Below, in pieces: positions 2,566 to 54,482 of a DNA stretch of 64,000 bases. The DNA is from Octopus sinensis. Taxonomy: Eukaryota. The notes beneath the pieces were generated by a model that saw only the letters and a list, made by a program, of their open reading frames with translations, ran no database searches and was not told the DNA's origin. Both the position numbers and the translations under genes were made by a program. Position 1 is the stretch's first letter. Each line of letters starts with the position of its first letter. The stretch is from the NCBI RefSeq assembly GCF_006345805.1, contig NC_043005.1:109120001-109184000 (forward strand). Reading direction: 5' to 3'.

Positions 2566-3340
2566 TAAATATATTCAAATATGAATTAGAAGTAGCACTG
2601 GAGTTACAAACATAATTGAATGCATGTACTTAATGTAAAAACCTAGTTTGTTTGCTAGCAGGCTGTGATTTGATGTGGTTGAGATGACTCTCTCAAAGCA
2701 CTGTGTGCTAAAACACCTGAATATCATAGACAGATGAGACAACTCACTTCAAATTCCTTTCAAGTGAGATGAACATAGATGGATCACCATTTTTGAAGTT
2801 TATCAACATTGCGTGCATGAACTGAATTGGAGCCGAACTGAATTGCCAGACCATGACGACATGCAAAATAGTATAAAAGCCTAGCTTACCCCTACAATGC
2901 ATACCATATTAATAAATTCAAATATGAATTAAAATCAGTGTTAGTGTTCTAAACATTATCGAACACACATACTTAATGTATGTGCTTTGCTTGTTCACCA
3001 GTAGGCTGCGATACAACATGGTGGAGATGACTCCCTCAAGTTGGCAGTTGTTAAAACATTTGAAAGTCATAGACAGGCAAGACAACTCACCCCAAGTCAT
3101 ATTCAGGAGCAATGGACATCAATGCTTTACTGTTTTTGCGGCTTATTAACATCACATAACTGAACCGAAATTGGAGGCGAACTGAATCATCAGTCTATAA
3201 CTCGATGCAAAATGGTAATAAAACTATTTGCTGGTATGCCTGGATGATGCATACGTAGGAATAAATTTAAATATGAATTAAAAGCAGCACTAGTGTTTTG
3301 AACATTATCAAACATACAAACTCAGGAAAAGTGCTTAGGT
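2566..3340. repeat. Diverged tandem repeat, ~345-bp unit, ~2.2 copies
   Basis: aaatatgaatta(g/a)aa..gcact recurs at about 2577, 2920 and 3269, with colinear internal motifs (gagatgactc, atcatagacag, gacaactcac, gaactgaat). Confidence 0.75.
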
Positions 3341-3730: not shown

Positions 3731-4576
3731 TAGAGTGCAGTGAAAATATTGTCATCCAAATAATGCAAAATTGAAAATAACACTGGCATTTCATTTTAAC
3801 AGATTTATTTACCGAAATTACATAAAAATATCTTGAAATACTAAAGAGTAAATTTATTCAATAAAATCATCCTTGGCTTCAACCACGGCCTCCAGACGAC
3901 TTTGGATTCTTCTGCAACTCTTCTGGAGTCCATCTTTGCCTTCATTTCATCTTTGGTGCGACAAGGAGTTTTGTTAGTCTCTCACTCAAATGCACCCCAC
4001 ACATAATAGGGTTGTAGGGTGGAGTGGGGTGTTAGGTGGCCAGATGTTAGGGATAAAGTGGACACAGAAATTTTCTGTGAGTCATGACTGGGTTTCTCCT
4101 GTTTGTATGGCATGTTGCAGAGTCCTGTTGCCAGACATAGGGTCTTCCAGCAGCCAACCTCTTCACACAGGGCAACACTACCTCCTCCATACACTTGATG
4201 TAGGCCTCTGTGTTGAGTCTGAGGCCATGTGGGAAGATGAATGGAGGCATAATGTCACCATCACAAGTGATCACTGCAAACACCATGATGTTCAATTTTT
4301 ATCACTCTCGACACATGTTTTAAGGACACAGAAAGCTAATGGTTGTCCTGTGTGTTCACCATCTGTTTATATTGGAGCTTCTGGCATGAATGCCAAGCAT
4401 TACAGCATGTTGTTTCAAGAATTCTGGCAGAGTGAATTGCATCGTGGAGCTGTTTTTCTCACAGACAGTATCCAGCTGACCCTACTATACTGCGTAGTCA
4501 ACACAATCAACAACAAATAATATGCATGCACAAAATTTAAAATGTATAATGGTGACAATTTACCCATTACACCCTG
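3731..4576 (-). mobile_element. Internally deleted Tc1/mariner element, maT (DD37D)-like
   Basis: Decayed DDD domain (MVFAVITCDGDIMPPFIFPHGLRLNTEAY..YVWQQDSATCH; YYVWGAFE). Imperfect TIRs (tagagtg.. / ..caccctg) are flanked by TA. Confidence 0.8.
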
Positions 4577-4650
4577 TATATTATGTGTGTGTTGATATAT
4601 ATATGTATGTGCAAATTTATATAAATAAATACACACACACATACATACAT

Positions 4651-4914
4651 AGGATCGCAGTTTTGATTCCCAGACTGGGCATTGTGAGTGTTTATTGAGC
4701 GAAAACACTTAAAAGCTCCCCGAGGCTCTGGCAGGGGAGGGCGATCCCTGCTGCACTCTTTTGCCACAACTTTCTCTCACTCTTTCTTCTGTTGGCCTGC
4801 TCGCTTAGACAGTGGGGTGGCGTCATTTGAAGGCTAAAACAATGCGAAGCGCATTGTGACCAGCGATGCTTAGCAACATCTCATTGCCTGGTCGGTCACA
4901 GAGATCACGGTGAT
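4651..4914 (+). mobile_element. tRNA-SINE family B (partial head, body, cacggtgata tail)
   Basis: Body shared with 55095-55370 and 55987-56198; 3' part shared with 56257-56378 (minus). Confidence 0.7.
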
Positions 4915-5110
4915 ATACATATATACATACACACTTATATATATTGTTTAGTCATAATGATACTAATAACATGGTGTCAGAAGTCAATACACCTATGCTC
5001 TGAGTGCACTGTATCTTATGGCAGAAACAGCTGTTAGCTAATGAATTACATAATCTGTTCCATTGTCATTTATTTAATTTCATATATACATTCTTTTATT
5101 CTTTTATTTT

Positions 5111-5600
5111 TTTATTTGTTTCAGTCATTTGACTGCCATCATGCTGGTGCCCCATCTCAAAGGGTTTTAGTCAAACAAATCAAACCCTCGGACTTATTTT
5201 ATTTTTGTAGCTTTGTACTTATTTTATCAGTCATTTTTGCTGAACTGCTAAGTTACAGGGATGTAAACACTGCATGGCACCTTGGCCAAATGTCTTCTAC
5301 TATAGCCTCTGGCTAACCAAAGCCTGGTGAGTGGATTTGGTAGGTGGAAACTGATAGAAGCCAGTCGTATGTGTGTGTGTGCATGTGCGTTTCTGCCTGT
5401 GTTTGTCACTCTATTACCACTTCACAACCGATGTTAGTGTGTTTATATCCTCATAACTTAGGAGTTCAGCAAGAGAGACTGATAGAATAAGTGCTAGGCT
5501 TTAAAAACAATAAGTCCTGGAGTCGATTTGTTTGACTAAAACCCTTGAAGGCAGTGCTCCAGCATGGCCACAGTCAAATGACTGAAACTAGTAAAAGAAT
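5111..5600. mobile_element. Two OR1-like SINE fragments, head to head (5111-5270 minus, 5271-5600 plus)
   Basis: Shared tail cagtcatttgac / gtcaaatgactgaaac in opposite orientations. Confidence 0.75.
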
Positions 5601-9903: not shown

Positions 9904-11087
9904 AGTTTCTTTATTGGCCACACAGGGTTGCACACAGATGGGACAAGTTACAAGGTAGAGCTTTTCTTTTGGGGGATGAAAAAAACAAAAAACAAAAGAA
10001 AAAAAAAGGGGGTGGCGTAGGTTTCGATCAAGAGGGATCGTAAAAGGGAAGAAAAGAACAAAAAAAAATTAAATAAATAAAATAAAAAATAAAAAGAATA
10101 AAAAGAAAAAAAAAAGAAAAGGAAAGGGAACAAAAGAAAAGAGAAATGAAAAAAGAAGAAAAAAGGGGAAAAAAAGGGGAAGAGGAAAAAAAAGAACGAT
10201 CAATAGGGATCGTGTATCACAGTGTTATGATATATGGTGTAAAGGGGAAAGCAAGTAAGGTTTATCCATGGGAAGAAAAGCCTACGAAAAAGACCACGGT
10301 AACCTTGGTCAATATTGTTATATGTTACCACATTTGTTTGCAAGTGGGTAACCCTCTGTTTTCAATTTCTGGGTTCATAGGATTATGCTCAAGGTGGCTT
10401 CGTCATTCATACGTGCCATTCTTGCTACATTCACCCATCTTTTTTTAAAACATTCGCTAGACAAAACTTGCCTCTCTACTCTCACTTTCTTTTTCAAGTC
10501 GTACTTGAAGAAGTTAATGAGAGATTGACCAGAGAGGAAAGTGTTTGTCTCCAATCCTTTCAGACGCGTCCACCAGATACATTCTTTCGCCATAACCACA
10601 AGGATGATGAAAATAGCTCTTCCTTCCCGTTTGAAGGAAGGAGGCGTGACAATATTGACGATGGACTCAGCTGATAAACCGACTCGTCCCACACGTGACA
10701 GCAGTTGTTCGACACAAGCCCACAGGTCAGAAATTGTTGGACACTGCACGAGTGCGTGCAGAACGGTTTCGTTGCTCTGACCACATCTCGGGCAGGTCGG
10801 CCCCGTGTTTCTCGAGCCGTGTCTGTAGAGCTTATCCCGAACAGGTAGCGCTTCTCGGTAACACTGCCAGGCCAGGGATCTCTGGAAGTTGTCCATGGGC
10901 CCTGGCCCGAAAGTCGTCCTGAACAGGCGGGTCAGGTACTCCTCGTCGACGTCCAGGTTCGCCCCGAGCTCATCGTCGTACCTCTCCTCCACTAATCCCC
11001 TATAGAATGCTTTGGTTGTGTTGAAGTCACTCAAGGTCGACCCAGGACGGCAGAGTTGCTTGAGAACAACGCGACACTCGCGGTGCC
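9904..11087 (-). mobile_element. 5'-truncated Tx1/L1-clade non-LTR retrotransposon (ORF2 C-terminus plus ~470-nt 3' UTR) inserted in (GATA)n
   Basis: Frame is open from the truncation (HRECRVVLKQLCRPGSTLSDFNTTK...) to the stop at 10375. It contains a zf-RVT-type CPRC..ETVLHALVQC motif. The 3' UTR is pyrimidine-rich with AATAAA at 9910-9915 (minus). Both junctions abut TATC/GATA repeats. Confidence 0.85.
10375..11034 (-). CDS. C-terminal 219 aa of Tx1/L1-like ORF2 (zf-RVT region); a truncated remnant, not a cellular gene
   Basis: ORF track: MDNFQRSLAWQCYREALPVRDKLYRHG..TCPRCGQSNETVLHALVQC, typical of the L1/Tx1 ORF2 C-terminal zinc finger. Confidence 0.8.
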   Translation of the reverse strand: MSDFNTTKAFYRGLVEERYDDELGANLDVDEEYLTRLFRTTFGPGPMDNFQRSLAWQCYREALPVRDKLYRHGSRNTGPTCPRCGQSNETVLHALVQCPTISDLWACVEQLLSRVGRVGLSAESIVNIVTPPSFKREGRAIFIILVVMAKECIWWTRLKGLETNTFLSGQSLINFFKYDLKKKVRVERQVLSSECFKKRWVNVARMARMNDEATLSIIL

Positions 11088-11149
<62 letters not shown>

Positions 11150-11221
11150 ATAGATAGATGATAGATAGATAGATAGATGGATAGATAGATAGATAGATAG
11201 ATGGATAGATAAATGATAGAT

Positions 11222-11253
<32 letters not shown>

Positions 11254-11263
11254 GGATAGATAA

Positions 11264-11305
<42 letters not shown>

Positions 11306-11389
11306 TGATAGATAGATAGATAGGTAGATAGATAGATAGATAGATAGATAGATTGATAGATAGATAGATAGATAGATAGACAGATAGAC

Positions 11390-11430
<41 letters not shown>

Positions 11431-11441
11431 TAGATAGATAG
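11088..11441. repeat. (GATA)n microsatellite; others at 15470-15525, 27306-27655, 30490-31010, 51163-51247
   Basis: Direct inspection. Confidence 0.95.
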
Positions 11442-11777
11442 GTGCTTAGACTTGTATAAATGTAATGATATGCACCTGATTCCATGTATGTGTAGAATAA
11501 AAAATACATGCACACGCACAGCCAAACTGATATCAAATGGTTATTAGATACGCTGCTGGCTGGATTCCATCTAAGAAGTAAGCGTATAAACATACGCATG
11601 CCATAGAGACATGCACAAACTTACATAGATCTATGTATGTCTATACACATGTAACACACAAATGATTTCTTAGGAAGTTATAAAATTATGCACATAGAGG
11701 TATGTATTTAGATATGTGTGTTTATGTCTGTGTGTGCGTATGTGTTTATGCATACGTGTGTGTCTGTGTATATATAT

Positions 11778-12649: not shown

Positions 12650-13178
12650 GAACCGCTGTTGTTGTTGTTGTTGTTACGTTGCATCATTGTGGTGGTGGTG
12701 GTGGTGGTGGTTGTATATTGTTATTGTTGTTGTCGTTATTGTTACTTTCTGTACAATCTCTTCATCTCAATCATCATCATCATTCATCAACATCATCTTC
12801 GTCGTAGTCATCATCATCATCATCATCATCATCACTACCATCATCATCACAACTATCATTATCATTATCATCATCATCATCACAACCACCACCACCACCA
12901 TCGCCACCATCATCACCACCACCACCATCATCCACAACATCATTATCATCATCATTATCATCATCATTATCCTCCTCCTTCTCCTCCTCCTCCTCATCAT
13001 CATCATCATCATCATCACCTTGTCGTTATCATTGTCATCGTCATCGTTGCTGTCATTGTTGCCCCAGTCACCACTGCAACTGCTGCCATTGTCACCATCA
13101 TCATCATTATCATTATCACCATCATCACCATCATCATCCTTCTCCTCCTCATCGTCCTCCTCCTCCTCCTCCTCCTCC

Positions 13179-17699: not shown

Positions 17700-19156
17700 C
17701 TTCTCCTATTAAAATTGTTCTTTGTGTTGTTTCAGGCTCCAGCAGGTGAGGAAAGAAGTCTCAAGTAAAAATGCAATTCACAACCCTTTTATTTACAAGT
17801 TACACAGAATAGATGAAGTGTGTTTCTCTCAGTCTACCATCTCAAGCTGTGTGCGTCTCATTGTATCTCCATTAACGTGGACCCATTGCCTCTGGAGATA
17901 TGACAAGCAGACAGGACTAGCCTGGAAACCCAGCCAGCGAAGTGTGTTCAGCAAGCACTTGCAGTGAAGAAGAGATAGAATCTGTTTTGTTGGGCCCTTA
18001 TATCCAGTTTGCCATCGTGGGCCTTGTTGTGATCTTGCGCATGGCAAATGGATGCAGGTGAGATCTTGTTCCAGTCTTGGAGATGGTAATGGCTGCTGGC
18101 GAGATCCAATATGGCACTGACTGCTTGTGCCGCTACAAACTAATTGCTGACTTTTATCTTGTAGACAACTCCCTTGTACATGGTTTTCACATTGACCTAT
18201 CTCTATTTTCTTTAGTAACCACAGGATAACAGAGCTTGGAACCATTTCAAAAGCTTTCTGAAAATCAATGAGTATTAGGTACATTTGCTCACTCTCTTTT
18301 ATGTACATCTCCAAGAGATATCTCTGTAGAAATAGGGCATTAATAGTTTTTCCTGGCATAAAACTTAACTATTTCTATTCCTAATCAATTACTCTATAAC
18401 TCCATATCGTTTAGTTCAATAATGTGATGCCTCTGTGATTACCTCTATCTAGTGCATCACTTTTGCCTTCATAGCACTTGACAGTGGTACTATATGGCTC
18501 AGAAACCTGAACGTTATCAAAGAAGCTTGAGAGGCAGTTGGATGGAACCTACACTCACCTCCTTATGAGAGCTCAAAATCTCTCGTGGAAGCGTCATCCA
18601 ACCAAAATGCAAATATATGCAAAACTACCACCTGTGTCATCTGTTGTGAAAGGTAGGAGAGTCCAGTTTGCTGGACATTGTTGTAGAGCTAAAAATGAGG
18701 CAATTTCTACTCTTCTCCTCTGGAAGCCATCTACTTGCAATACCAGAGGGCGCACACTCTCCTACCCTGATGTAATCTCCAGGGATACAGGCATCCAGCA
18801 ACAGGACCTTTGTAATGCTATGATGGACTGTGAAGTCTGGCGTAGCATGGTAAATTCCATTGTCTCGACCACGGTTGAGCAATAATGATGATGACACACC
18901 ACTCTTTGGGTAAGATACGTTCTTGTATTATGTGTTTGACTCTAGGGGTAATTAGCACATGCCCTACTTTGTCATATATTTCAATCATCTCAGCAGCTTT
19001 TTCTGGTCTACTGAGTTCTTTCTTTGCTTTCGTATCTTTGGTCAAATTTCCAACCACACTGTAACTAATTTGATAGCTAATCCCTACATTGTGTCTATTT
19101 GAGATAAAGTCGCTTTCCTCTTTCTTGTAAGTATTTTCTTCATTGAACCCATACAT
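17700..19156 (-). mobile_element. Decayed RTE-clade LINE RT region, interrupted at about 18488-18897
   Basis: AAEMIEIYDKVGHVLITPRVKHIIQERILPKEWC continues after the insertion as TTVKCYEGKSDALDRGNHRGITLL..FMPGKT..LIDFQKAFEMVP. Confidence 0.75.
18488..18897 (+). mobile_element. 3' fragment of an RTE-X/RTE-like LINE nested in the opposite orientation
   Basis: LYGSET*TLSKKLERQLDGTYTHLL..RRVQFAGHCCR..LLLWKP..RGRTLSYPDVISRD..VWRSMV, followed by a (TGA)n tail. Confidence 0.8.
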
Positions 19157-38333: not shown

Positions 38334-38634
38334 CATTGTTATAATTGTGCATTGCTTTCAGTATTAGTATGAGTAGTTTAAAATATTGGTGTGTGCAGGG
38401 GTTCCTGCAGTCTGAGGTGTTTTAGGTGGATGTCTGCAATTTTCTATGGTCTCAAGACGTTTTTAAGATTTTAGATTCCCTTATAGCTTCTTGGGTGTTT
38501 AATGGAAGGAAGGGTTAAAACACTTGTCTCAGGCAAAGGTAGGCATTTCTTGAAAATCAGGCAGCCATGTAGAGGCTTCCTAAATGGGTGGTACTTGTTG
38601 TTGCTGTTGTTGTTATTACATATCATATTCTAAG

Positions 38635-38845
38635 GCAACGAGCTGGCAGAATTATTAGCATGCCAGGCAAAATGCTTAACTATTTCATCCACAGTTACAT
38701 ACCGAGTTAAATTCCGCCAAGGTCGACTTTGCCTTTCATTCTTTTATGGTTGATAAATTAAGTACCAGTGAAATACTGGGGTCCATGCAATCGACTAGCT
38801 CTCTCCCCCAAAATTCCAGGCCTGTAGTAGAAGGGATTATATATC
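38635..38845 (+). mobile_element. Nin/Deu-domain tRNA-SINE
   Basis: gtcgactttgcctttcattcttttatggttgataaattaagtaccag resembles the Nin/Deu domain (gcctttcatcctttcggggtcgataaa.tgagtacc). Confidence 0.7.
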
Positions 38846-42949: not shown

Positions 42950-44160
42950 ATTTTCTTTCTCATGTTGCAGAGTAGACATGGTCCCTCTTTTGGAAGCATG
43001 CACCAAGGAGATCCAGAGATCAGTGATCCAATTTCTTCATTCTGAAGGTGTGTCAGAGACTGAAATTTATCACAGCCTTTCAGTACATTTTGTGAATGAT
43101 GCTCTACTGTGTAGCAGTATGAGAGGATCAAGAAGTTTTAAAATGTCTGGACAAGCATGGAGAACTGGTGTGAAGATTAACAAGTTCATGTGAGAGTTCT
43201 GGCAAACCGATGAGTGACCATCAATGAAGTGGCTTGTTCTCTGCTAATTAGTCATGGTTCTGCATACAGAATCATCCTCAAGGTTTGCTTCCATAAAGTC
43301 TGTGTGAGATGAGTGTCAAGAGAGCTTACTGAAGAGCATAAGTGCGACTCTATGGAGATCTGTTAATTCTAATTTGACCACTAAAATGATAAAAGTGAAG
43401 TTTTAGAGAGGATAGTCACAGACCTGAGTCCAGTATGTTAAGCCAGAATCCAAAAGGCAGAATATAGAGTGGAAACAATCAGAATAACTAGTTCAAAAGA
43501 AATTCAAGACTCAACCTTATGCAGAAAAAGTGATGCTTACTGTTTTTTTGGTGGGGATGCAAAATGTCCTATACTAGAATGTAACCTTGAAAAGGGGTCT
43601 ACAGTCACTAGTGTAGGCTATAGGGGAATGCTGGCCAACAAAATGAAATCAGAAATTTGTGCCAAATGTTGAGGTCTGCTGTCAAAGCAAGTATTATTGT
43701 TGCATGACAAAGACAGCAAGCTGGCAGGACCATTAGCATGCTGGGCGAAAAGCTTTGCAGTATTTCATCTGCCGTTACGTTGTGAGTTCAAATTCCGCCA
43801 AAGTCGACTTAGCCTGTCATCCTTTCGGGGTCGATAAATTAAGTACCAGTTATGCACTGAGGTCGATGTAATCGACTTAATCCGTTTGTCTGTCCTTGTT
43901 TGTCCCCTCTGTGTGTAGCCCCTTGTGGGTAGTAAAGAAATAGGTATTTCATCTGCTGCTACGTTCTGAGTTCAAATTCTGCCGAGGTCGACTTTGCCTT
44001 TCATCCTTTCGAGGTCAATAAAGTAAGCACCTGTTGAGTATTGGGTTCTCTCTAAATTTCAGGCCTTTTGCCTAGAGTTGAAAGGATTATTGTTGCATGA
44101 CAATGCACTGCCACAAACGGTTGCCCATTCTATTGAAACCATTGAAAAATAGTTTTGAGT
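42950..44160 (+). mobile_element. Decayed mariner (DD34D-type) transposase, interrupted by a nested Nin-SINE pair
   Basis: N-terminal MVPLLEACTKEIQRSVIQFLHSEG. Also GDAKCPILECNLEKGSTVTS..LLSKQVLLLHD / LLHDNALPQT, split by an 18-bp duplication. Confidence 0.75.
43711..44085 (+). mobile_element. Nested pair of Nin-domain SINEs with an 18-bp TSD (43693-43710 / 44086-44103)
   Basis: Two Nin domains. The inner unit 43760-43943 ends in a Tx1-like tail. TSD attattgttgcatgacaa. Confidence 0.8.
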
Positions 44161-44299: not shown

Positions 44300-44950
44300 A
44301 TGCGTGGCTTTTCAGCCACATGGTTCTGGTTCAGTTCCACTGCATGGCACCTTGGGCAAATGTCTTCTACTATAGTGTCAAGCCAACCAAAGCCTTGTGG
44401 GTGGATTTGGTAGAGGGAAACTGAAAGATGCCCGTCATATATATGTGTGTGTGTGTGTGTATTTGTCTACCATCACCACTTGACAACTGGTGGTGGTGAC
44501 GTGATCATATCCCCATAACTTAGTGGTTTGACAATAGAGATTGATAAGATGAGTACTAGGGTTTATTTGTTCAACTAAAACCCTTCAAGGCAGTGCCCTG
44601 GCATGACTGCAGTCAAATGGTTGCAACAAGTTAAAGAATAAAATAAAAAATAATTTGTAATTCCTTTTGGGGGAGGGGAAAGTTGTTTACATCAACCCCA
44701 GTACTCAAATGGTAGTTAATTTACATACATACTTTTTCATTCTGCTTTTCTTTTCTTTGTTTCTGTCTTTTGACTGCAGCCATGCTGGAGCACTACTTTT
44801 AGTCGAACTAATCAACCCCACAACTTCTTTGTAAGCCTGGTACTTATTCAATCATTCTCTTTTGCTGAACCACTAAGCTATGGAGATGGAAACACATCAA
44901 CATGGGTTGTCAAGTGATGGTGGGTGGACAAACACAGACACAGAGACACA
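44300..44950. mobile_element. Two decayed OR1-like SINEs (44300-44645 plus; 44755-44950 minus, partial)
   Basis: Same family motifs, diverged. Confidence 0.7.
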
Positions 44951-44974
44951 AAAATATATACATATATATATATA

Positions 44975-51936: not shown

Positions 51937-52036
51937 NNNNNNNNNNNNNNNNNNNNNNNNNNNNNNNNNNNNNNNNNNNNNNNNNNNNNNNNNNNNNNNN
52001 NNNNNNNNNNNNNNNNNNNNNNNNNNNNNNNNNNNN
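51937..52036. other. Assembly gap (100 N)
   Basis: Run of N. Confidence 1.
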
Positions 52037-52628: not shown

Positions 52629-54482
52629 GTAACATGGGAAGCAAAACAATAAATTGAACAATTAAATAGTTTAATCATTAAATGATAAATTCGTACAAAC
52701 AAATGACAAATCTCATAAATTACAGATGTTTCAATTCTATTAATAAAAACGAGTTTTCCAAGAAAAATTAAATATCGTTTAAGTATAATGAGGTTTCATC
52801 CGATAGACATATCTTCTTGAATATTTTACAAAAAATAACAATTGAAAGTTTTTATAACTGCTAATGCTATTCAAAAAATTGCTTTTTGAGAGAAAGCTTA
52901 AATCATAAATAAATAATCTAATTGAAATTTCGTAATATATATAATCGACTTAATTCGTCTGTCTGTCCTTGTTTGTCTCATCTGTGTTTAACCCCTTCTT
53001 TGTAGTAAAGAAATGTATATATTATATAACCTGTATTTACTTTAAACTATAACTTGAATAAATTGTAAGCTTTTATGTAGATTTGAATTAATATATGAAG
53101 TAATGTTTTACTGCAAATATATATACATGTGTATATGGAAATGTATATGCATTCTAATTGTAAATATATATACAGATGAATAAGTAAACTTCTGTATTTA
53201 AATATGCATGTATGTATATGTACATGTGTGTGTATGTATATATGCATAAATGGATAGATGTACATGTGTATATATAGATATATATAAATACGTCTATATG
53301 AATGTGTGTATTGTGCTATGGAATCAGCTATAGAACTAGATACTAATAGATTTAAATTTAGGAATTTTCAAAATTTCAGCTAGATTATTTATTTATGATT
53401 AATCTTGCTATCAAAAAGCGTTTTTTTTTTGTTTTGAATAGTGATAACAGGTATACAAATTTTCAATTACTCTTTACTCTTTTACTCTTTTACTTGTTTC
53501 AGTCATTTTGACTGCGGCCATGCTGGAGCACTGCCTTTAGTCGAGCAAATCGACCCCGGGACTTATTCTTTGGAAGCCCAGTACTTATTCTAATCGGTCT
53601 CTTTTGCCGAACCGCTAAGTGACGGGGATGTAAACACACCGGCATCGGTTGTCAAGCAATGCTAGAGGGACAAACACAGACACACAAACATACACACACA
53701 CACACATATATATATACATATATACGACAGACTTCTTTCAGTTTCCGTCTATCAAATCCACTCACAAGGCATTGGTCGGCCCAAGGCTATAGCTGAAGAC
53801 ACTTGCCCAAGATGCCACACAGTGGGACTGAACCCAGAACCATGTGGCTGGTTAGCAAGCTACTTACCACACAGCCACTCCTGCTATTTTTCCTGATGTA
53901 TTTAAGAAGATATACGTATCTGATGAAACCTCATTATATTTAAACAATATTTTATCATTCTTGAAAAACTTGTTTTTATTAATGGAGTTGAAACAGCTGT
54001 ACTTTATAGGATGTGACATTAATTGGAACCGTGTTGTTGGTAAGCAAGCTACTTACCATACAGCCACTCCTGCACCTATATCCATTCATTTATTCACTTA
54101 TTCGTTTATTTGATTCAGTCATTTGACTGCAGCCATGCTGGAGCACTGCCTTTAATTGAACAAATCCACCCCAAGACTTATTCTTTGTAAACCTAGTACT
54201 TATTCTATCAGTCCCTTTTTATAAAACTGCTAAGCTATGAGGACGTCAACACACCAGCATCAGTAGTCAAGTGATCATGGTGGGGACAAACTTAGACACA
54301 CAAACATACACACACACATATATCCGACGGGCTTCTTTCAGTTTCCGTCTACCAAGTCCACTCCCAAGGCTTTGGTCAGCTTAAGGCTATAATAAAAACA
54401 CTTGCCCGAGGTGCCATGCAGTGGGACTGAACCGGGAACTATGTGGTGGGAAAGCAAGCTACTTTCCACACAGCCACTCTCT
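52190..54482 (-). mobile_element. OR1-like SINEs (52190-52345 partial; 53470-53885; 54105-54482) with intervening unique DNA
   Basis: Same family motifs; the span includes non-SINE sequence. Confidence 0.75.

What the first reader, a model, noticed from the sequence alone, without database searches (positions are those of the whole stretch)
43711..44085. Nin-domain SINE with a Tx1-derived tail nested at the homologous position inside another Nin-SINE
Seen: the inner unit 43760-43943 begins at gtatttcatctgc and is followed by a second gtatttcatctgc (43944) that resumes the older SINE. Its tail (43894-43940: ccttgt---ttgtcccctctgtgtgtagccccttgtgggtagtaaagaaa) aligns at 39/47 positions with the 3' terminus of the Tx1 element at 9906-9955 (ccttgtaacttgtcccatctgtgtgcaaccctgtgtggccaataaagaaa). 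A third truncated copy of this tail at 52941-53014 is also followed by gtat. Established: SINEs borrow LINE 3' ends, and Tx1-clade endonucleases are often sequence-specific. Inference: a Tx1-mobilised SINE that targets its own relatives at a fixed site, a self-targeting SINE-in-SINE system with a seamless homologous 5' junction.
Basis: partly seen in the sequence, partly recalled or inferred. Interest (0 to 1): 0.8.

Follow-up and report, generated by a model that had tools for sequence, protein, structure and literature searches.

The report
One octopus SINE nested in another
Two related short retroposons (SINEs) of an octopus genome sit one inside, or directly behind, the other within a dead mariner transposon; ordinary LINE-driven insertion explains the arrangement, and nothing found here points to a self-targeting system.

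Summary
Window 43711-44085 is a two-unit SINE composite bounded by one perfect 18-bp target-site duplication, inside a mariner transposase relic. The left part carries a 3' tail ("tail1"). The right part restarts at the same 13-mer, GTATTTCATCTGC, and ends in a different tail ("tail2"). Tail1 is LINE-derived. Its last ~45 nt match the 3' ends of one LINE family in the window, in Octopus sinensis, in Argonauta hians and on an ENA contig. That family has an endonuclease, a reverse transcriptase and a zf-RVT domain and belongs to the L1/Tx1 group; Tx1 versus L1 could not be resolved.

Best reading (about 0.55): a tail1 SINE inserted into an older tail2 SINE. The nick fell at a TATTT-like site, which related elements in Argonauta also use. 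The 13-mer is the target-site duplication. The seamless 5' junction arose because the new cDNA annealed to the homologous target. The main rival is a single insertion of a chimeric or dimeric template (about 0.3).

I found no evidence for sequence-specific self-targeting. The only other tail1 copy is not in a SINE, and related Argonauta elements have T/A-rich flanks. A genome-wide test was not possible with these tools. The finding is ordinary and of modest interest.

The parts
43693..43710 (+). 5' copy of the 18-bp target-site duplication (attattgttgcatgacaa) of the whole composite. The first 5 nt (attat) may instead be microhomology with the tail2 terminus.
   Evidence: It is identical to 44086-44103. 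Joining the flanks restores a mariner-type reading frame ...SKQVLLLHDNALPQTVAHSIETIEK.
43711..43759 (+). SINE head (the 5' end of the element). It is assigned to the older, outer tail2 SINE under the preferred model, or to the left unit under the rival.
   Evidence: It starts at the same position as the monomer at 38633 and the head on Logan contig L011. It keeps only 1 of 5-6 inferred CpG sites.
43760..43772 (+). Left copy of the 13-mer GTATTTCATCTGC. This is the proposed target-site duplication of the inner insertion and the point where cDNA and target annealed.
   Evidence: It is identical to 43944-43956 and bounded by mismatches on both sides.
43773..43943 (+). Inner unit: a 5'-truncated tail1 SINE of 171 bp. 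SINE core runs 43773-43851, a linker follows, and the LINE-derived tail1 box at about 43890-43940 ends in ...gtagtaaagaaatag.
   Evidence: The core is homologous to other copies. The tail is homologous to LINE 3' ends. It retains 6/7 core CpG sites plus 3 in the linker and tail.
43944..43956 (+). Right copy of the 13-mer. The preceding G (43943) may be a 14th duplicated base that keeps the ancestral CpG G, which the left copy has lost.
43957..44085 (+). Remainder of the outer tail2 SINE: core plus tail2, ending ...gttgaaagg(atta). It has a ~16-nt deletion relative to the monomer at 38633.
   Evidence: Head + one 13-mer + this segment aligns colinearly with the monomeric tail2 SINE at 38633-38845, 79% identity.
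44086..44103 (+). 3' copy of the 18-bp target-site duplication of the composite.
38633..38845 (+). Monomeric full-length tail2 SINE with a 13-bp duplication (atatcatattcta). It shows that the outer type exists without an inner unit.
52939..53014 (+). 5'-truncated tail1 SINE fragment in non-SINE, AT-rich flanks. It shows that tail1 is a true element terminus outside the composite.
9906..11083 (-). 5'-truncated LINE copy. The ORF2 C-terminus with zf-RVT is at 10375-11034, followed by a ~470-nt 3' UTR. The terminal box 9906-9955 is homologous to tail1. The copy is embedded in a (CTAT)n microsatellite.

Best explanation
The composite was probably built by two successive retropositions. First, a full-length SINE with tail2 inserted into a mariner relic and made the 13-18-bp duplication (att)attgttgcatgacaa. 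Later, an RNA of a sister SINE inserted into that resident copy in the same orientation. The sister SINE has the same head and core, but its tail (tail1) is copied from the 3' end of an L1/Tx1-type LINE family.

The bottom strand was nicked just 5' of GTATTT, a T/A-rich site of the kind this LINE family's machinery seems to prefer. The top strand was cut 13-14 nt downstream. As reverse transcription of the incoming SINE passed its own GTATTTC(G/A)TCTGC, the new cDNA could pair over 12-13 nt with the single-stranded target overhang. That pairing ended cDNA synthesis and primed the second strand. The result is a 5' truncation exactly at the homologous position, a 'seamless' junction, and a 13-bp duplication.

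What is shown: the anatomy, both duplications, the homology of tail1 to LINE 3' ends, the domain architecture of the LINE family, and the existence of both monomer types. What is inferred: the order of events, the annealing step, and the nick-site preference.
For: (1) One perfect 18-bp repeat brackets the composite, and joining the flanks restores a mariner frame.
(2) Head + one 13-mer + right unit reconstructs a colinear tail2 SINE like the monomer at 38633.
(3) The 13-mer is perfect and bounded by mismatches, while the next 79 aligned bases are only 83.5% identical. The chance of 13/13 identical at that divergence is about 0.10. Its length matches the other duplications here: 13 bp at 38633, 13-18 bp for the composite, and 9-15 bp in Argonauta.
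(4) CpG bookkeeping on a five-copy alignment shows different ages. The head keeps 1 of 5-6 inferred CpG sites. The left core and tail keep 9 of 10. The right core keeps 4 of 7. Fisher tests give p=0.072 for head versus left core alone, and 0.008 with one extra inferred head site and the three linker/tail sites added. Head plus right unit versus left body gives 0.029. This pattern suggests that the head is older than the body it is joined to.
(5) Both 13-mers carry CA where a CpG is suspected, as expected if both descend from one decayed target.
(6) Duplications of related tail-bearing SINEs in Argonauta start TATATTT, ATTTTTA, TTATTTG, ATATACA, TATTTCT and ATTTTTT. The inner unit's duplication starts GTATTTC and fragment B is followed by GTATATA.
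(7) At least two Argonauta elements with this tail inserted, each with its own duplication, directly beside or at the edge of an older relative: L010 214-346 and 12698-12857.
(8) Termination of reverse transcription by annealing of internal cDNA to the 5' target site is an established model for 5'-truncated L1 insertions (PMC2912911, which cites Zingler et al. 2005).
Against: No second full-length tail1 SINE could be obtained, so the head of that subfamily is unknown. A tail1 master gene with a CpG-poor head would erase argument (4). The consensus rests on only 3-5 old copies, several CpG sites are inferred, and the cleanest test is marginal (p=0.07). The left and right cores do not differ significantly in decay (p=0.56). 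The suspected CpG inside the 13-mer reads CA in three of four copies, so it may never have been a CpG. The structure [full-length small RNA][5'-truncated second element] inside a single duplication is also exactly what a template-switch or RNA-ligation chimera looks like. Head-to-tail arrays in Argonauta show that this machinery may often join units.
Confidence: 0.55

Rival explanations
1. The composite arose in a single insertion of a chimeric template. Reverse transcription started on a tail2 SINE RNA at the mariner target and copied it back to GTATTTC. It then switched to the 3' end of a tail1 SINE RNA, or the two RNAs had been ligated beforehand, and copied that RNA to its 5' end. This gives [full tail1 SINE][5'-truncated tail2 SINE] inside one duplication, like U6/L1 chimeric retrocopies.
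For: There is only one unambiguous duplication, around the whole composite. The left unit runs from SINE position 1 to a complete tail1 terminus. The architecture matches known U6-L1 chimeras (Buzdin 2002, cited in PMC4494074; RNA-ligation route in PMC6789731). Possible GTAT(TT) microhomology exists between the tail1 terminus and the switch point. Argonauta shows head-to-tail arrays of SINEs with this tail, including two units that are 98% identical.
Against: The head is more CpG-decayed than the body it would belong to. The perfect 13-mer with a shared CA, bounded by mismatches, would be a roughly 10% coincidence. The start of the right unit coincides with a TATTT-type nick site and with a duplication-sized repeat.
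Confidence: 0.2
2. The composite is a copy of a dimeric SINE family. A nested or chimeric dimer became a source gene and now transposes as one ~375-bp unit.
For: A single duplication surrounds the whole composite. It begins with an intact-length head that could carry the internal promoter. Composite and dimeric SINEs are common in other taxa (my own knowledge).
Against: Both halves exist as separate elements in the same 64 kb: the tail2 monomer at 38633 and the tail1 fragment at 52939 in a non-SINE flank. No second dimer was seen in the window, in 20 kb of O. sinensis, or in the Logan contigs. The uneven CpG decay along the unit argues against one age.
Confidence: 0.1
3. The tail1 SINE and its LINE partner carry a sequence-specific endonuclease preference for GGTATTTC inside related SINEs, so the family is recurrently nested at this fixed site.
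For: Tx1-clade LINEs and the SINEs they mobilise can be strongly target-specific; SINEU with Tx1-Mar inserting into Mariner-N4_AMi is an example (PMC4494074). Both tail1 copies in the window are followed by GTAT. The window's LINE copy lies inside a (CTAT)n microsatellite. TATTT occurs only once in the SINE head and core, so same-orientation hits would pile up there.
Against: Only one of two tail1 copies lies in a SINE. In the Argonauta sample of 29 elements with the homologous tail, the flanks are T/A-rich (TCTAT/TATTT), or are the 5' ends of other SINEs, and never an internal core site. LINE copies of the family have unrelated 3' flanks. The seamless 5' junction needs no specificity.
Confidence: 0.1
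4. The tail2 unit re-inserted at the same nick. A tail1 SINE inserted first, and a 5'-truncated tail2 SINE later landed exactly between its 3' end and the downstream duplication copy.
For: The target ATTATT matches the tail2 terminus GGATTAT. Re-use of a target directly behind an existing element is seen in Argonauta at L010 202/214-346.
Against: The second event would need to be a blunt insertion with no duplication of its own. In the Argonauta case the second element does have its own duplication. The right unit looks at least as decayed as the left body.
Confidence: 0.05

Closest known systems
SINE-LINE pairs with a shared 3' tail (Ohshima & Okada; Kajikawa & Okada 2002, as summarised in PMC4494074)
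   Same: The last ~45 nt of tail1 are homologous to the 3' terminus of an autonomous-type LINE family (APE+RT+zf-RVT). The box is conserved among LINE copies whose proteins are only 44-78% identical. That conservation is expected for a recognition element of the reverse transcriptase.
   Different: The partnership rests on sequence alone; mobilisation has not been tested. A sister subfamily with the same head and core carries an unrelated tail (tail2), whose partner was not looked for.
Microhomology or annealing-mediated 5' attachment of truncated L1/Alu insertions (Zingler et al. 2005; 'double TPRT' model, PMC2912911)
   Same: The 5' truncation point coincides with sequence identity between the incoming cDNA and the target overhang.
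   Different: The 'microhomology' here is 12-13 nt because the target is a relative of the incoming element. This makes the junction look like a seamless homologous splice.
U6/L1 and other chimeric retrocopies made by template switching or RNA ligation (Buzdin 2002; PMC6789731; bioRxiv 10.1101/2025.02.02.635956)
   Same: A full-length small RNA copy is fused to a 5'-truncated second retroelement, and one duplication surrounds both.
   Different: Both partners here are SINEs of one family. The uneven decay and the duplication-like 13-mer fit two events better.
Target-specific Tx1-clade LINEs and their SINEs (Tx1-Mar with SINEU in crocodilians; Kibi/Koshi in microsatellites; PMC4494074)
   Same: The LINE is of the L1/Tx1 group. 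One LINE copy sits inside a (CTAT)n microsatellite, and elements with the shared tail cluster next to each other in Argonauta.
   Different: No target was shown to be used in more than 20% of copies, which is the criterion in PMC4494074. The flanks suggest a short T/A-rich preference. Tx1 clade membership was not established.
tRNA-Deu / Nin-DC SINEs (Nishihara 2006; Piskurek & Jackson 2011; 'tRNA-Deu' is 61 Mb of the O. vulgaris genome, PMC13282606)
   Same: The architecture is modular: head, conserved core, LINE-derived tail. A B-box-like GAGTTCAAATTCC is present. The same core occurs with different tails in octopus and Argonauta.
   Different: The core was not compared with a reference Nin/Deu sequence here. 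ARAGORN and Rfam find no tRNA in the head.

Membership tests
SINE mobilised through a LINE-derived 3' tail | The 3' end of the SINE is homologous to the 3' end of a LINE present in the same genome | tested here: met
   39/47 identity to the window LINE terminus, the best non-self hit in the window. The same box sits at the 3' ends of LINE copies in O. sinensis, Argonauta and an ENA contig.
SINE mobilised through a LINE-derived 3' tail | Short non-coding element with flanking target-site duplications and independent copies | tested here: met
   There are duplications of 13 and 13-18 bp, a monomer at 38633 and a fragment at 52939.
SINE mobilised through a LINE-derived 3' tail | Head derived from a small RNA gene with an internal pol III promoter | tested here: inconclusive
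   A B-box-like GAGTTCAAATTCC is seen by eye. ARAGORN finds no tRNA in the window and Rfam gives no match at E<=1.
Tx1 clade of non-LTR retrotransposons | ORF2 with APE endonuclease + RT + C-terminal zinc-binding domain (shared with the L1 clade) | tested here: met
   P0035 (1111 aa, same 90% cluster as P0002) has Exo_endo_phos + RVT_1 + zf-RVT. The window ORF has zf-RVT. The best solved relative is human L1 ORF2p at 1.5e-21, against 2e-12 for the R2-type proteins.
Tx1 clade of non-LTR retrotransposons | The RT domain groups with Tx1 references rather than L1 in a phylogeny (RTclass1-type test) | not testable with these tools
   No Tx1 reference sequence could be reached. None of the 10 relatives from the exhaustive search that were looked up carries a name. 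The only indirect support is that L1-Tx1 is about 5 times more abundant than L1 in O. vulgaris (PMC13282606 supplement).
Tx1 clade of non-LTR retrotransposons | Target-sequence preference (more than 20% of copies in one kind of target, the criterion of PMC4494074) | tested here: inconclusive
   One of four LINE copies lies in (CTAT)n. The 3' flanks of the other copies are unrelated to it. The sample is far too small.
Nin-DC / Deu SINE superfamily | Central domain homologous to the Nin/Deu consensus | not testable with these tools
   No reference sequence is available in the tools or in the held papers. tRNA-Deu SINEs are annotated in O. vulgaris.
Self-targeting (site-specific) SINE | Independent copies recurrently inserted at the same position of the same target sequence | tested here: not met
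   One of two tail1 copies in the window lies in a SINE. Of the 29 Argonauta elements with this tail, only one abuts internal SINE sequence, at the truncated 5' edge of an older short-type SINE; none lies at the site homologous to GTATTTC in a Nin-type core. A genome-wide sample was not obtainable.
Nested retroposon insertion | The inner element is flanked by its own target-site duplication, and excising it restores a contiguous outer element | tested here: met
   A perfect 13-bp repeat flanks 43773-43943. The reconstructed outer element aligns colinearly with the monomer at 38633. Caveat: the repeat is also homologous SINE sequence, so this does not exclude a chimera.

The most novel reading that the evidence does not exclude
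The L1/Tx1-type LINE family that donated tail1 may prime reverse transcription through a short terminal unit (GTAT/CTAT-TTT) that also occurs once inside the SINE body (GGTATTTC). Its SINEs would then be recurrently driven into the same internal position of their own relatives, and head-to-tail behind them. They would build nested and tandem SINE arrays as a regular genome-shaping process in octopods.
Probability: 0.1. Interest if true: 0.55.

Novelty: new member of a known kind. Interest (0 to 1): 0.25.

Why it matters
The locus illustrates three known principles of SINE biology in an octopus genome: modular tails borrowed from a LINE, TPRT with duplications of about 13 bp, and homology-assisted 5' joining. 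It also links a SINE subfamily that looks like the abundant tRNA-Deu type to an L1/Tx1-type LINE family whose 3' box is conserved from Octopus to Argonauta. That link is useful for repeat annotation and for choosing the LINE partner in mobilisation assays. It opens no new question unless genome-wide data show recurrent use of the same internal site.

Tried and rejected
More copies of the tail1 SINE were needed and could not be obtained.
- A scan of metagenome contigs for the tail gave only chance matches.
- Scans of the bacterial/archaeal genome collection and the viral contigs for the SINE core found nothing, apart from one chance phage match to the tail pattern.
- A protein search with the antisense ORF that spans the junction found no candidate.
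- Look-ups of LINE-protein contigs gave only two long loci, O. sinensis L001 and Argonauta L010. The rest were short, largely redundant Logan/ENA/JGI contigs with one extra SINE head and no tail1 SINE.
- A look-up of the window's own LINE ORF found no record, so the source assembly stays unidentified.

Naming the LINE clade through relatives failed. The exhaustive search gave 28,099 hits, but none of the 10 relatives from it that I looked up carries a name; the only names seen anywhere were uninformative ('hypothetical protein', or a MAG-derived 'zinc-binding domain-containing protein'). Searching papers for printed SINE sequences found nothing, and no usable supplements were held. ARAGORN and Rfam do not recognise the head as tRNA. 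No paralogous empty mariner site exists in the window. Re-insertion of the tail2 unit at the same nick was considered and judged unlikely, because the right unit has no duplication of its own.
Full report
**What the window is.** The best protein relatives of a LINE fragment in the window come from Octopus sinensis and Argonauta hians, and from metagenome or read-assembly contigs that evidently contain cephalopod DNA. The window is therefore octopod nuclear DNA. The exact assembly could not be identified.

**Checking the observation.**
- GTATTTCATCTGC stands at 43760-43772 and again at 43944-43956.
- After each copy comes homologous SINE core, 66 of 79 positions identical.
- The left unit continues into a tail that ends ...ccccttgtgggtagtaaagaaatag at 43943. 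The right unit continues into a different tail that ends ...gttgaaagg at 44085.
- The tail alignment to the reverse complement of 9906-9955 reproduces at 39/47 with one 3-nt gap. It is the best non-self match for that tail anywhere in the window: score 27, against at most 16 elsewhere.
- The third copy is at 52939-53014, 86.8% identical over 76 nt, and is followed by gtatatatt.

The whole composite 43711-44085 is bracketed by a perfect 18-bp direct repeat, attattgttgcatgacaa, at 43693-43710 and 44086-44103. Joining the flanks restores a mariner-type reading frame...SKQVLLLHDNALPQTVAHSIETIEK.... The host is therefore a dead mariner transposase gene, split at its conserved LLHDNA motif.

A monomeric SINE with the same head, core and the second tail lies at 38633-38845, with a 13-bp duplication, atatcatattcta. 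So two sister subfamilies exist with a common head and core: 'tail1' (...GTAGTAAAGAAAT) and 'tail2' (...AGAAGGGATTAT). Each occurs on its own in this window. That already argues against the dimer being the only form.

**The tail and its LINE.** The element at 9906-~11083 (minus strand) is a 5'-truncated LINE. Its ORF (10375-11034) has a zf-RVT domain, followed by a ~470-nt 3' UTR.

A longer member of the same protein family, P0035 (1111 aa), has an APE-type endonuclease, RVT_1 and zf-RVT. The best solved relative of the RT-containing P0010 is human L1 ORF2p (1.5e-21), ahead of R2 proteins (about 1e-11 to 1e-12). The family therefore belongs to the L1/Tx1 group.

I could not separate Tx1 from L1. 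No Tx1 reference is reachable, and none of the 10 relatives from the exhaustive search that I looked up carries a name. Indirectly, 'L1-Tx1' elements cover about five times more of the O. vulgaris genome than 'L1' (56 versus 10.8 Mb; PMC13282606 supplement).

The 3'-terminal ~45 nt are shared by the following:
- the window LINE;
- an O. sinensis copy (L001, ending at ~11069);
- an Argonauta copy (L010, ~11190);
- an ENA contig (L017);
- both tail1 SINE copies in the window;
- 20-odd SINE copies in 20 kb of Argonauta.

The proteins of these LINE copies are only 44-78% identical to the window's. A conserved terminal box is what one expects of the sequence that the reverse transcriptase recognises. 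The claim that the SINE tail is borrowed from this LINE family is well supported.

**How the two units came to lie together.** Three architecturally equivalent histories exist.
- M1: a tail1 SINE inserted into a resident tail2 SINE.
- M2: one insertion of a chimeric template. Reverse transcription began on a tail2 SINE RNA and continued on a tail1 SINE RNA, as in U6/L1 chimeras.
- M3: a dimeric source gene that moves as a unit.

A fourth history, re-insertion of the tail2 unit at the nick used by the tail1 unit, would require a blunt event with no duplication of its own. I set it aside.

**Evidence that bears on M1 against M2/M3.**

First, removing 43773-43956 yields a contiguous tail2 SINE that aligns colinearly with the monomer at 38633.

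Second, the 13-mer behaves like a target-site duplication. It is perfect and bounded by mismatches on both sides, although the following core is only 83.5% identical. The chance of 13/13 identical at that divergence is about 0.10. Its length equals the other duplications in this system: 13 bp, 13-18 bp, and 9-15 bp in Argonauta.

Third, CpG decay is uneven. I aligned the five available heads and cores: the left unit, the right unit, the 38633 copy, an O. sinensis copy and a Logan contig. I called a CpG site where some copies show CG and others TG or CA.
- The head 43711-43759 keeps 1 of 5 confident sites. It keeps 1 of 6 if the G preserved just before the right 13-mer is counted.
- The left core after the 13-mer keeps 6 of 7, and the linker and tail add 3 more intact CpGs.
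- The right core keeps 4 of 7.
- Fisher tests give p=0.072 for head versus left core alone, 0.008 with the extra sites, and 0.029 for head plus right unit versus left body.

The head looks older than the body it is joined to, as M1 predicts and as M2/M3 do not.

Fourth, both 13-mers read CA at a suspected CpG. That is as expected if both descend from one already-decayed target.

These arguments are suggestive, not decisive. The consensus rests on few old copies, and no second full-length tail1 SINE could be found, so a tail1 subfamily with a CpG-poor head cannot be excluded. The left and right cores do not differ significantly (p=0.56). I put M1 at about 0.55 and the single-event alternatives (M2+M3) at about 0.3.

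**Why the junction is 'seamless'.** Under M1 no special targeting is needed. The top-strand overhang left by the staggered cuts is the 13-nt GTATTTCATCTGC of the resident SINE. The incoming SINE RNA contains the same sequence. Once reverse transcription has copied it, the cDNA can pair with that overhang over 12-13 nt, which ends cDNA synthesis and primes the second strand. This is the established annealing or microhomology model for 5'-truncated L1 and Alu insertions (PMC2912911, citing Zingler et al. 2005), with an unusually long 'microhomology' because the target is a relative. Any same-orientation insertion of one family member into another should give such a junction.

**Why that site.** The 20-kb Argonauta locus L010 carries 29 elements with the homologous tail. 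Where exact duplications of at least 9 nt could be found, they begin TATATTT, ATTTTTA, TTATTTG, ATATACA, TATTTCT and ATTTTTT. About half of all copies read TCTAT, followed by more T/A-rich sequence, directly after ...GAGAAA.

In the window, the inner unit's duplication begins GTATTTC and fragment B is followed by GTATATA. It does not point to a recognition site inside SINEs. TATTT occurs only once in the otherwise GC-rich head and core, so insertions that do hit a SINE in this orientation would tend to land there anyway.

**Self-targeting.** Scans of the metagenome, genome and viral collections returned no SINE copies, and the contig look-ups gave only two long octopod loci.

Within the data at hand, one of two tail1 copies lies in a SINE. 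Of the 29 Argonauta elements, only one is followed by internal SINE sequence: it inserted at the truncated 5' edge of an older short-type SINE, not at an internal core site. LINE copies of the family have unrelated 3' flanks.

Argonauta does show many head-to-tail juxtapositions.
- A triple array at 4903-5362, in which units 2 and 3 are 98% identical.
- A pair at 3107-3307.
- An element at 214-346, inserted with the duplication TATATTTATAC directly behind the element that ends at 202.
- An element at ~12698-12857, inserted with the duplication TTATTTGCTAG(CTGG) at the 5' edge of an older truncated SINE.

At least some of these are independent insertions with their own duplications. Clustering of these elements next to relatives therefore seems real, and it deserves a proper count. 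It points to re-use of T/A-rich sites at element ends, not to a fixed internal site. Target-specific Tx1 LINEs that carry SINEs with them are already known: Tx1-Mar and SINEU in a crocodilian mariner (PMC4494074).

**Labels.** 'Nin domain' could not be tested, because no reference sequence was reachable. 'tRNA-Deu' SINEs are a major class in O. vulgaris, at 61 Mb. ARAGORN and Rfam do not recognise a tRNA in the head. A B-box-like GAGTTCAAATTCC is visible by eye.

**Verdict.** The LINE-derived tail is confirmed. The nested reading is favoured but unproven. Self-targeting through a sequence-specific endonuclease is not supported. The finding is an ordinary, instructive product of target-primed reverse transcription in a repeat-rich genome. 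I rate it a new member of a known kind, with interest about 0.25.

Noticed in passing
window 9906-11600 (minus strand): The 5'-truncated LINE copy abuts more than 450 bp of (CTAT)n at its truncated 5' end (perfect runs 11088-11429, imperfect to ~11600). It is followed at its 3' end by cttatctatctagctat. It therefore appears to sit inside a (CTAT)n microsatellite, as the microsatellite-targeting Tx1-clade elements Kibi and Koshi do. Perfect (CTAT)n runs cover about 1.3% of the window.
   Followed up: partly
L010 (Argonauta hians) 4540-5362, 3107-3307, 150-350, 12698-12920: Elements carrying the same LINE-type tail are chained head to tail. The chain at 4540-5362 is a Nin-type SINE, a LINE 3' fragment with an (ATT)n tail, then three copies of a ~157-bp tRNA-like SINE (units 2 and 3 are 98% identical). 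Two other juxtapositions have their own duplications (TATATTTATAC; TTATTTGCTAG). About 29 tail-bearing elements lie in 20 kb.
   Followed up: partly
proteins P0012 / P0032 (NCBI MCP3653585.1, WP_288064025.1): Proteins annotated as 'zinc-binding domain-containing protein [Herbaspirillum sp.]' from a MAG are 63% identical to the octopod LINE ORF2 C-terminus. This is almost certainly host (cephalopod) contamination in a bacterial MAG that has reached RefSeq and UniRef.
   Followed up: no
L002 and proteins P0002, P0009, P0010, P0035 (JGI metagenome 3300045673): A JGI metagenome contains cephalopod LINE contigs, including a near-full-length ORF2 (1111 aa; APE+RT+zf-RVT). The tail1 SINE pattern was nevertheless absent from the metagenome collection.
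   Followed up: partly
window 38833-38845 and 44081-44090: The tail2 SINE terminus GGATTAT overlaps the start of the target-site duplication (attat) in the composite. This suggests 3'-end microhomology priming for this subfamily too. Its LINE partner was not looked for.
   Followed up: no
window 44560-44960 (minus strand) and about 25 other places in the window: A different, very abundant interspersed repeat (ttgtcc..cttgacaac..agcttagtggttc..ataagtaccagg..ggggttgat..cgactaaa..) flanks the mariner relic. It has roughly 25 copies in 64 kb, and part of it resembles the SINE core.
   Followed up: no
window 51937-52036: A run of 100 N (an assembly gap) lies about 900 bp upstream of the tail1 fragment at 52939.
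   Followed up: no
window 17829-18359 (minus strand): An ORF with a reverse-transcriptase-like motif (..LILIDFQKAFEMVP..) marks another degraded retroelement, unrelated to the LINE family studied here.
   Followed up: no
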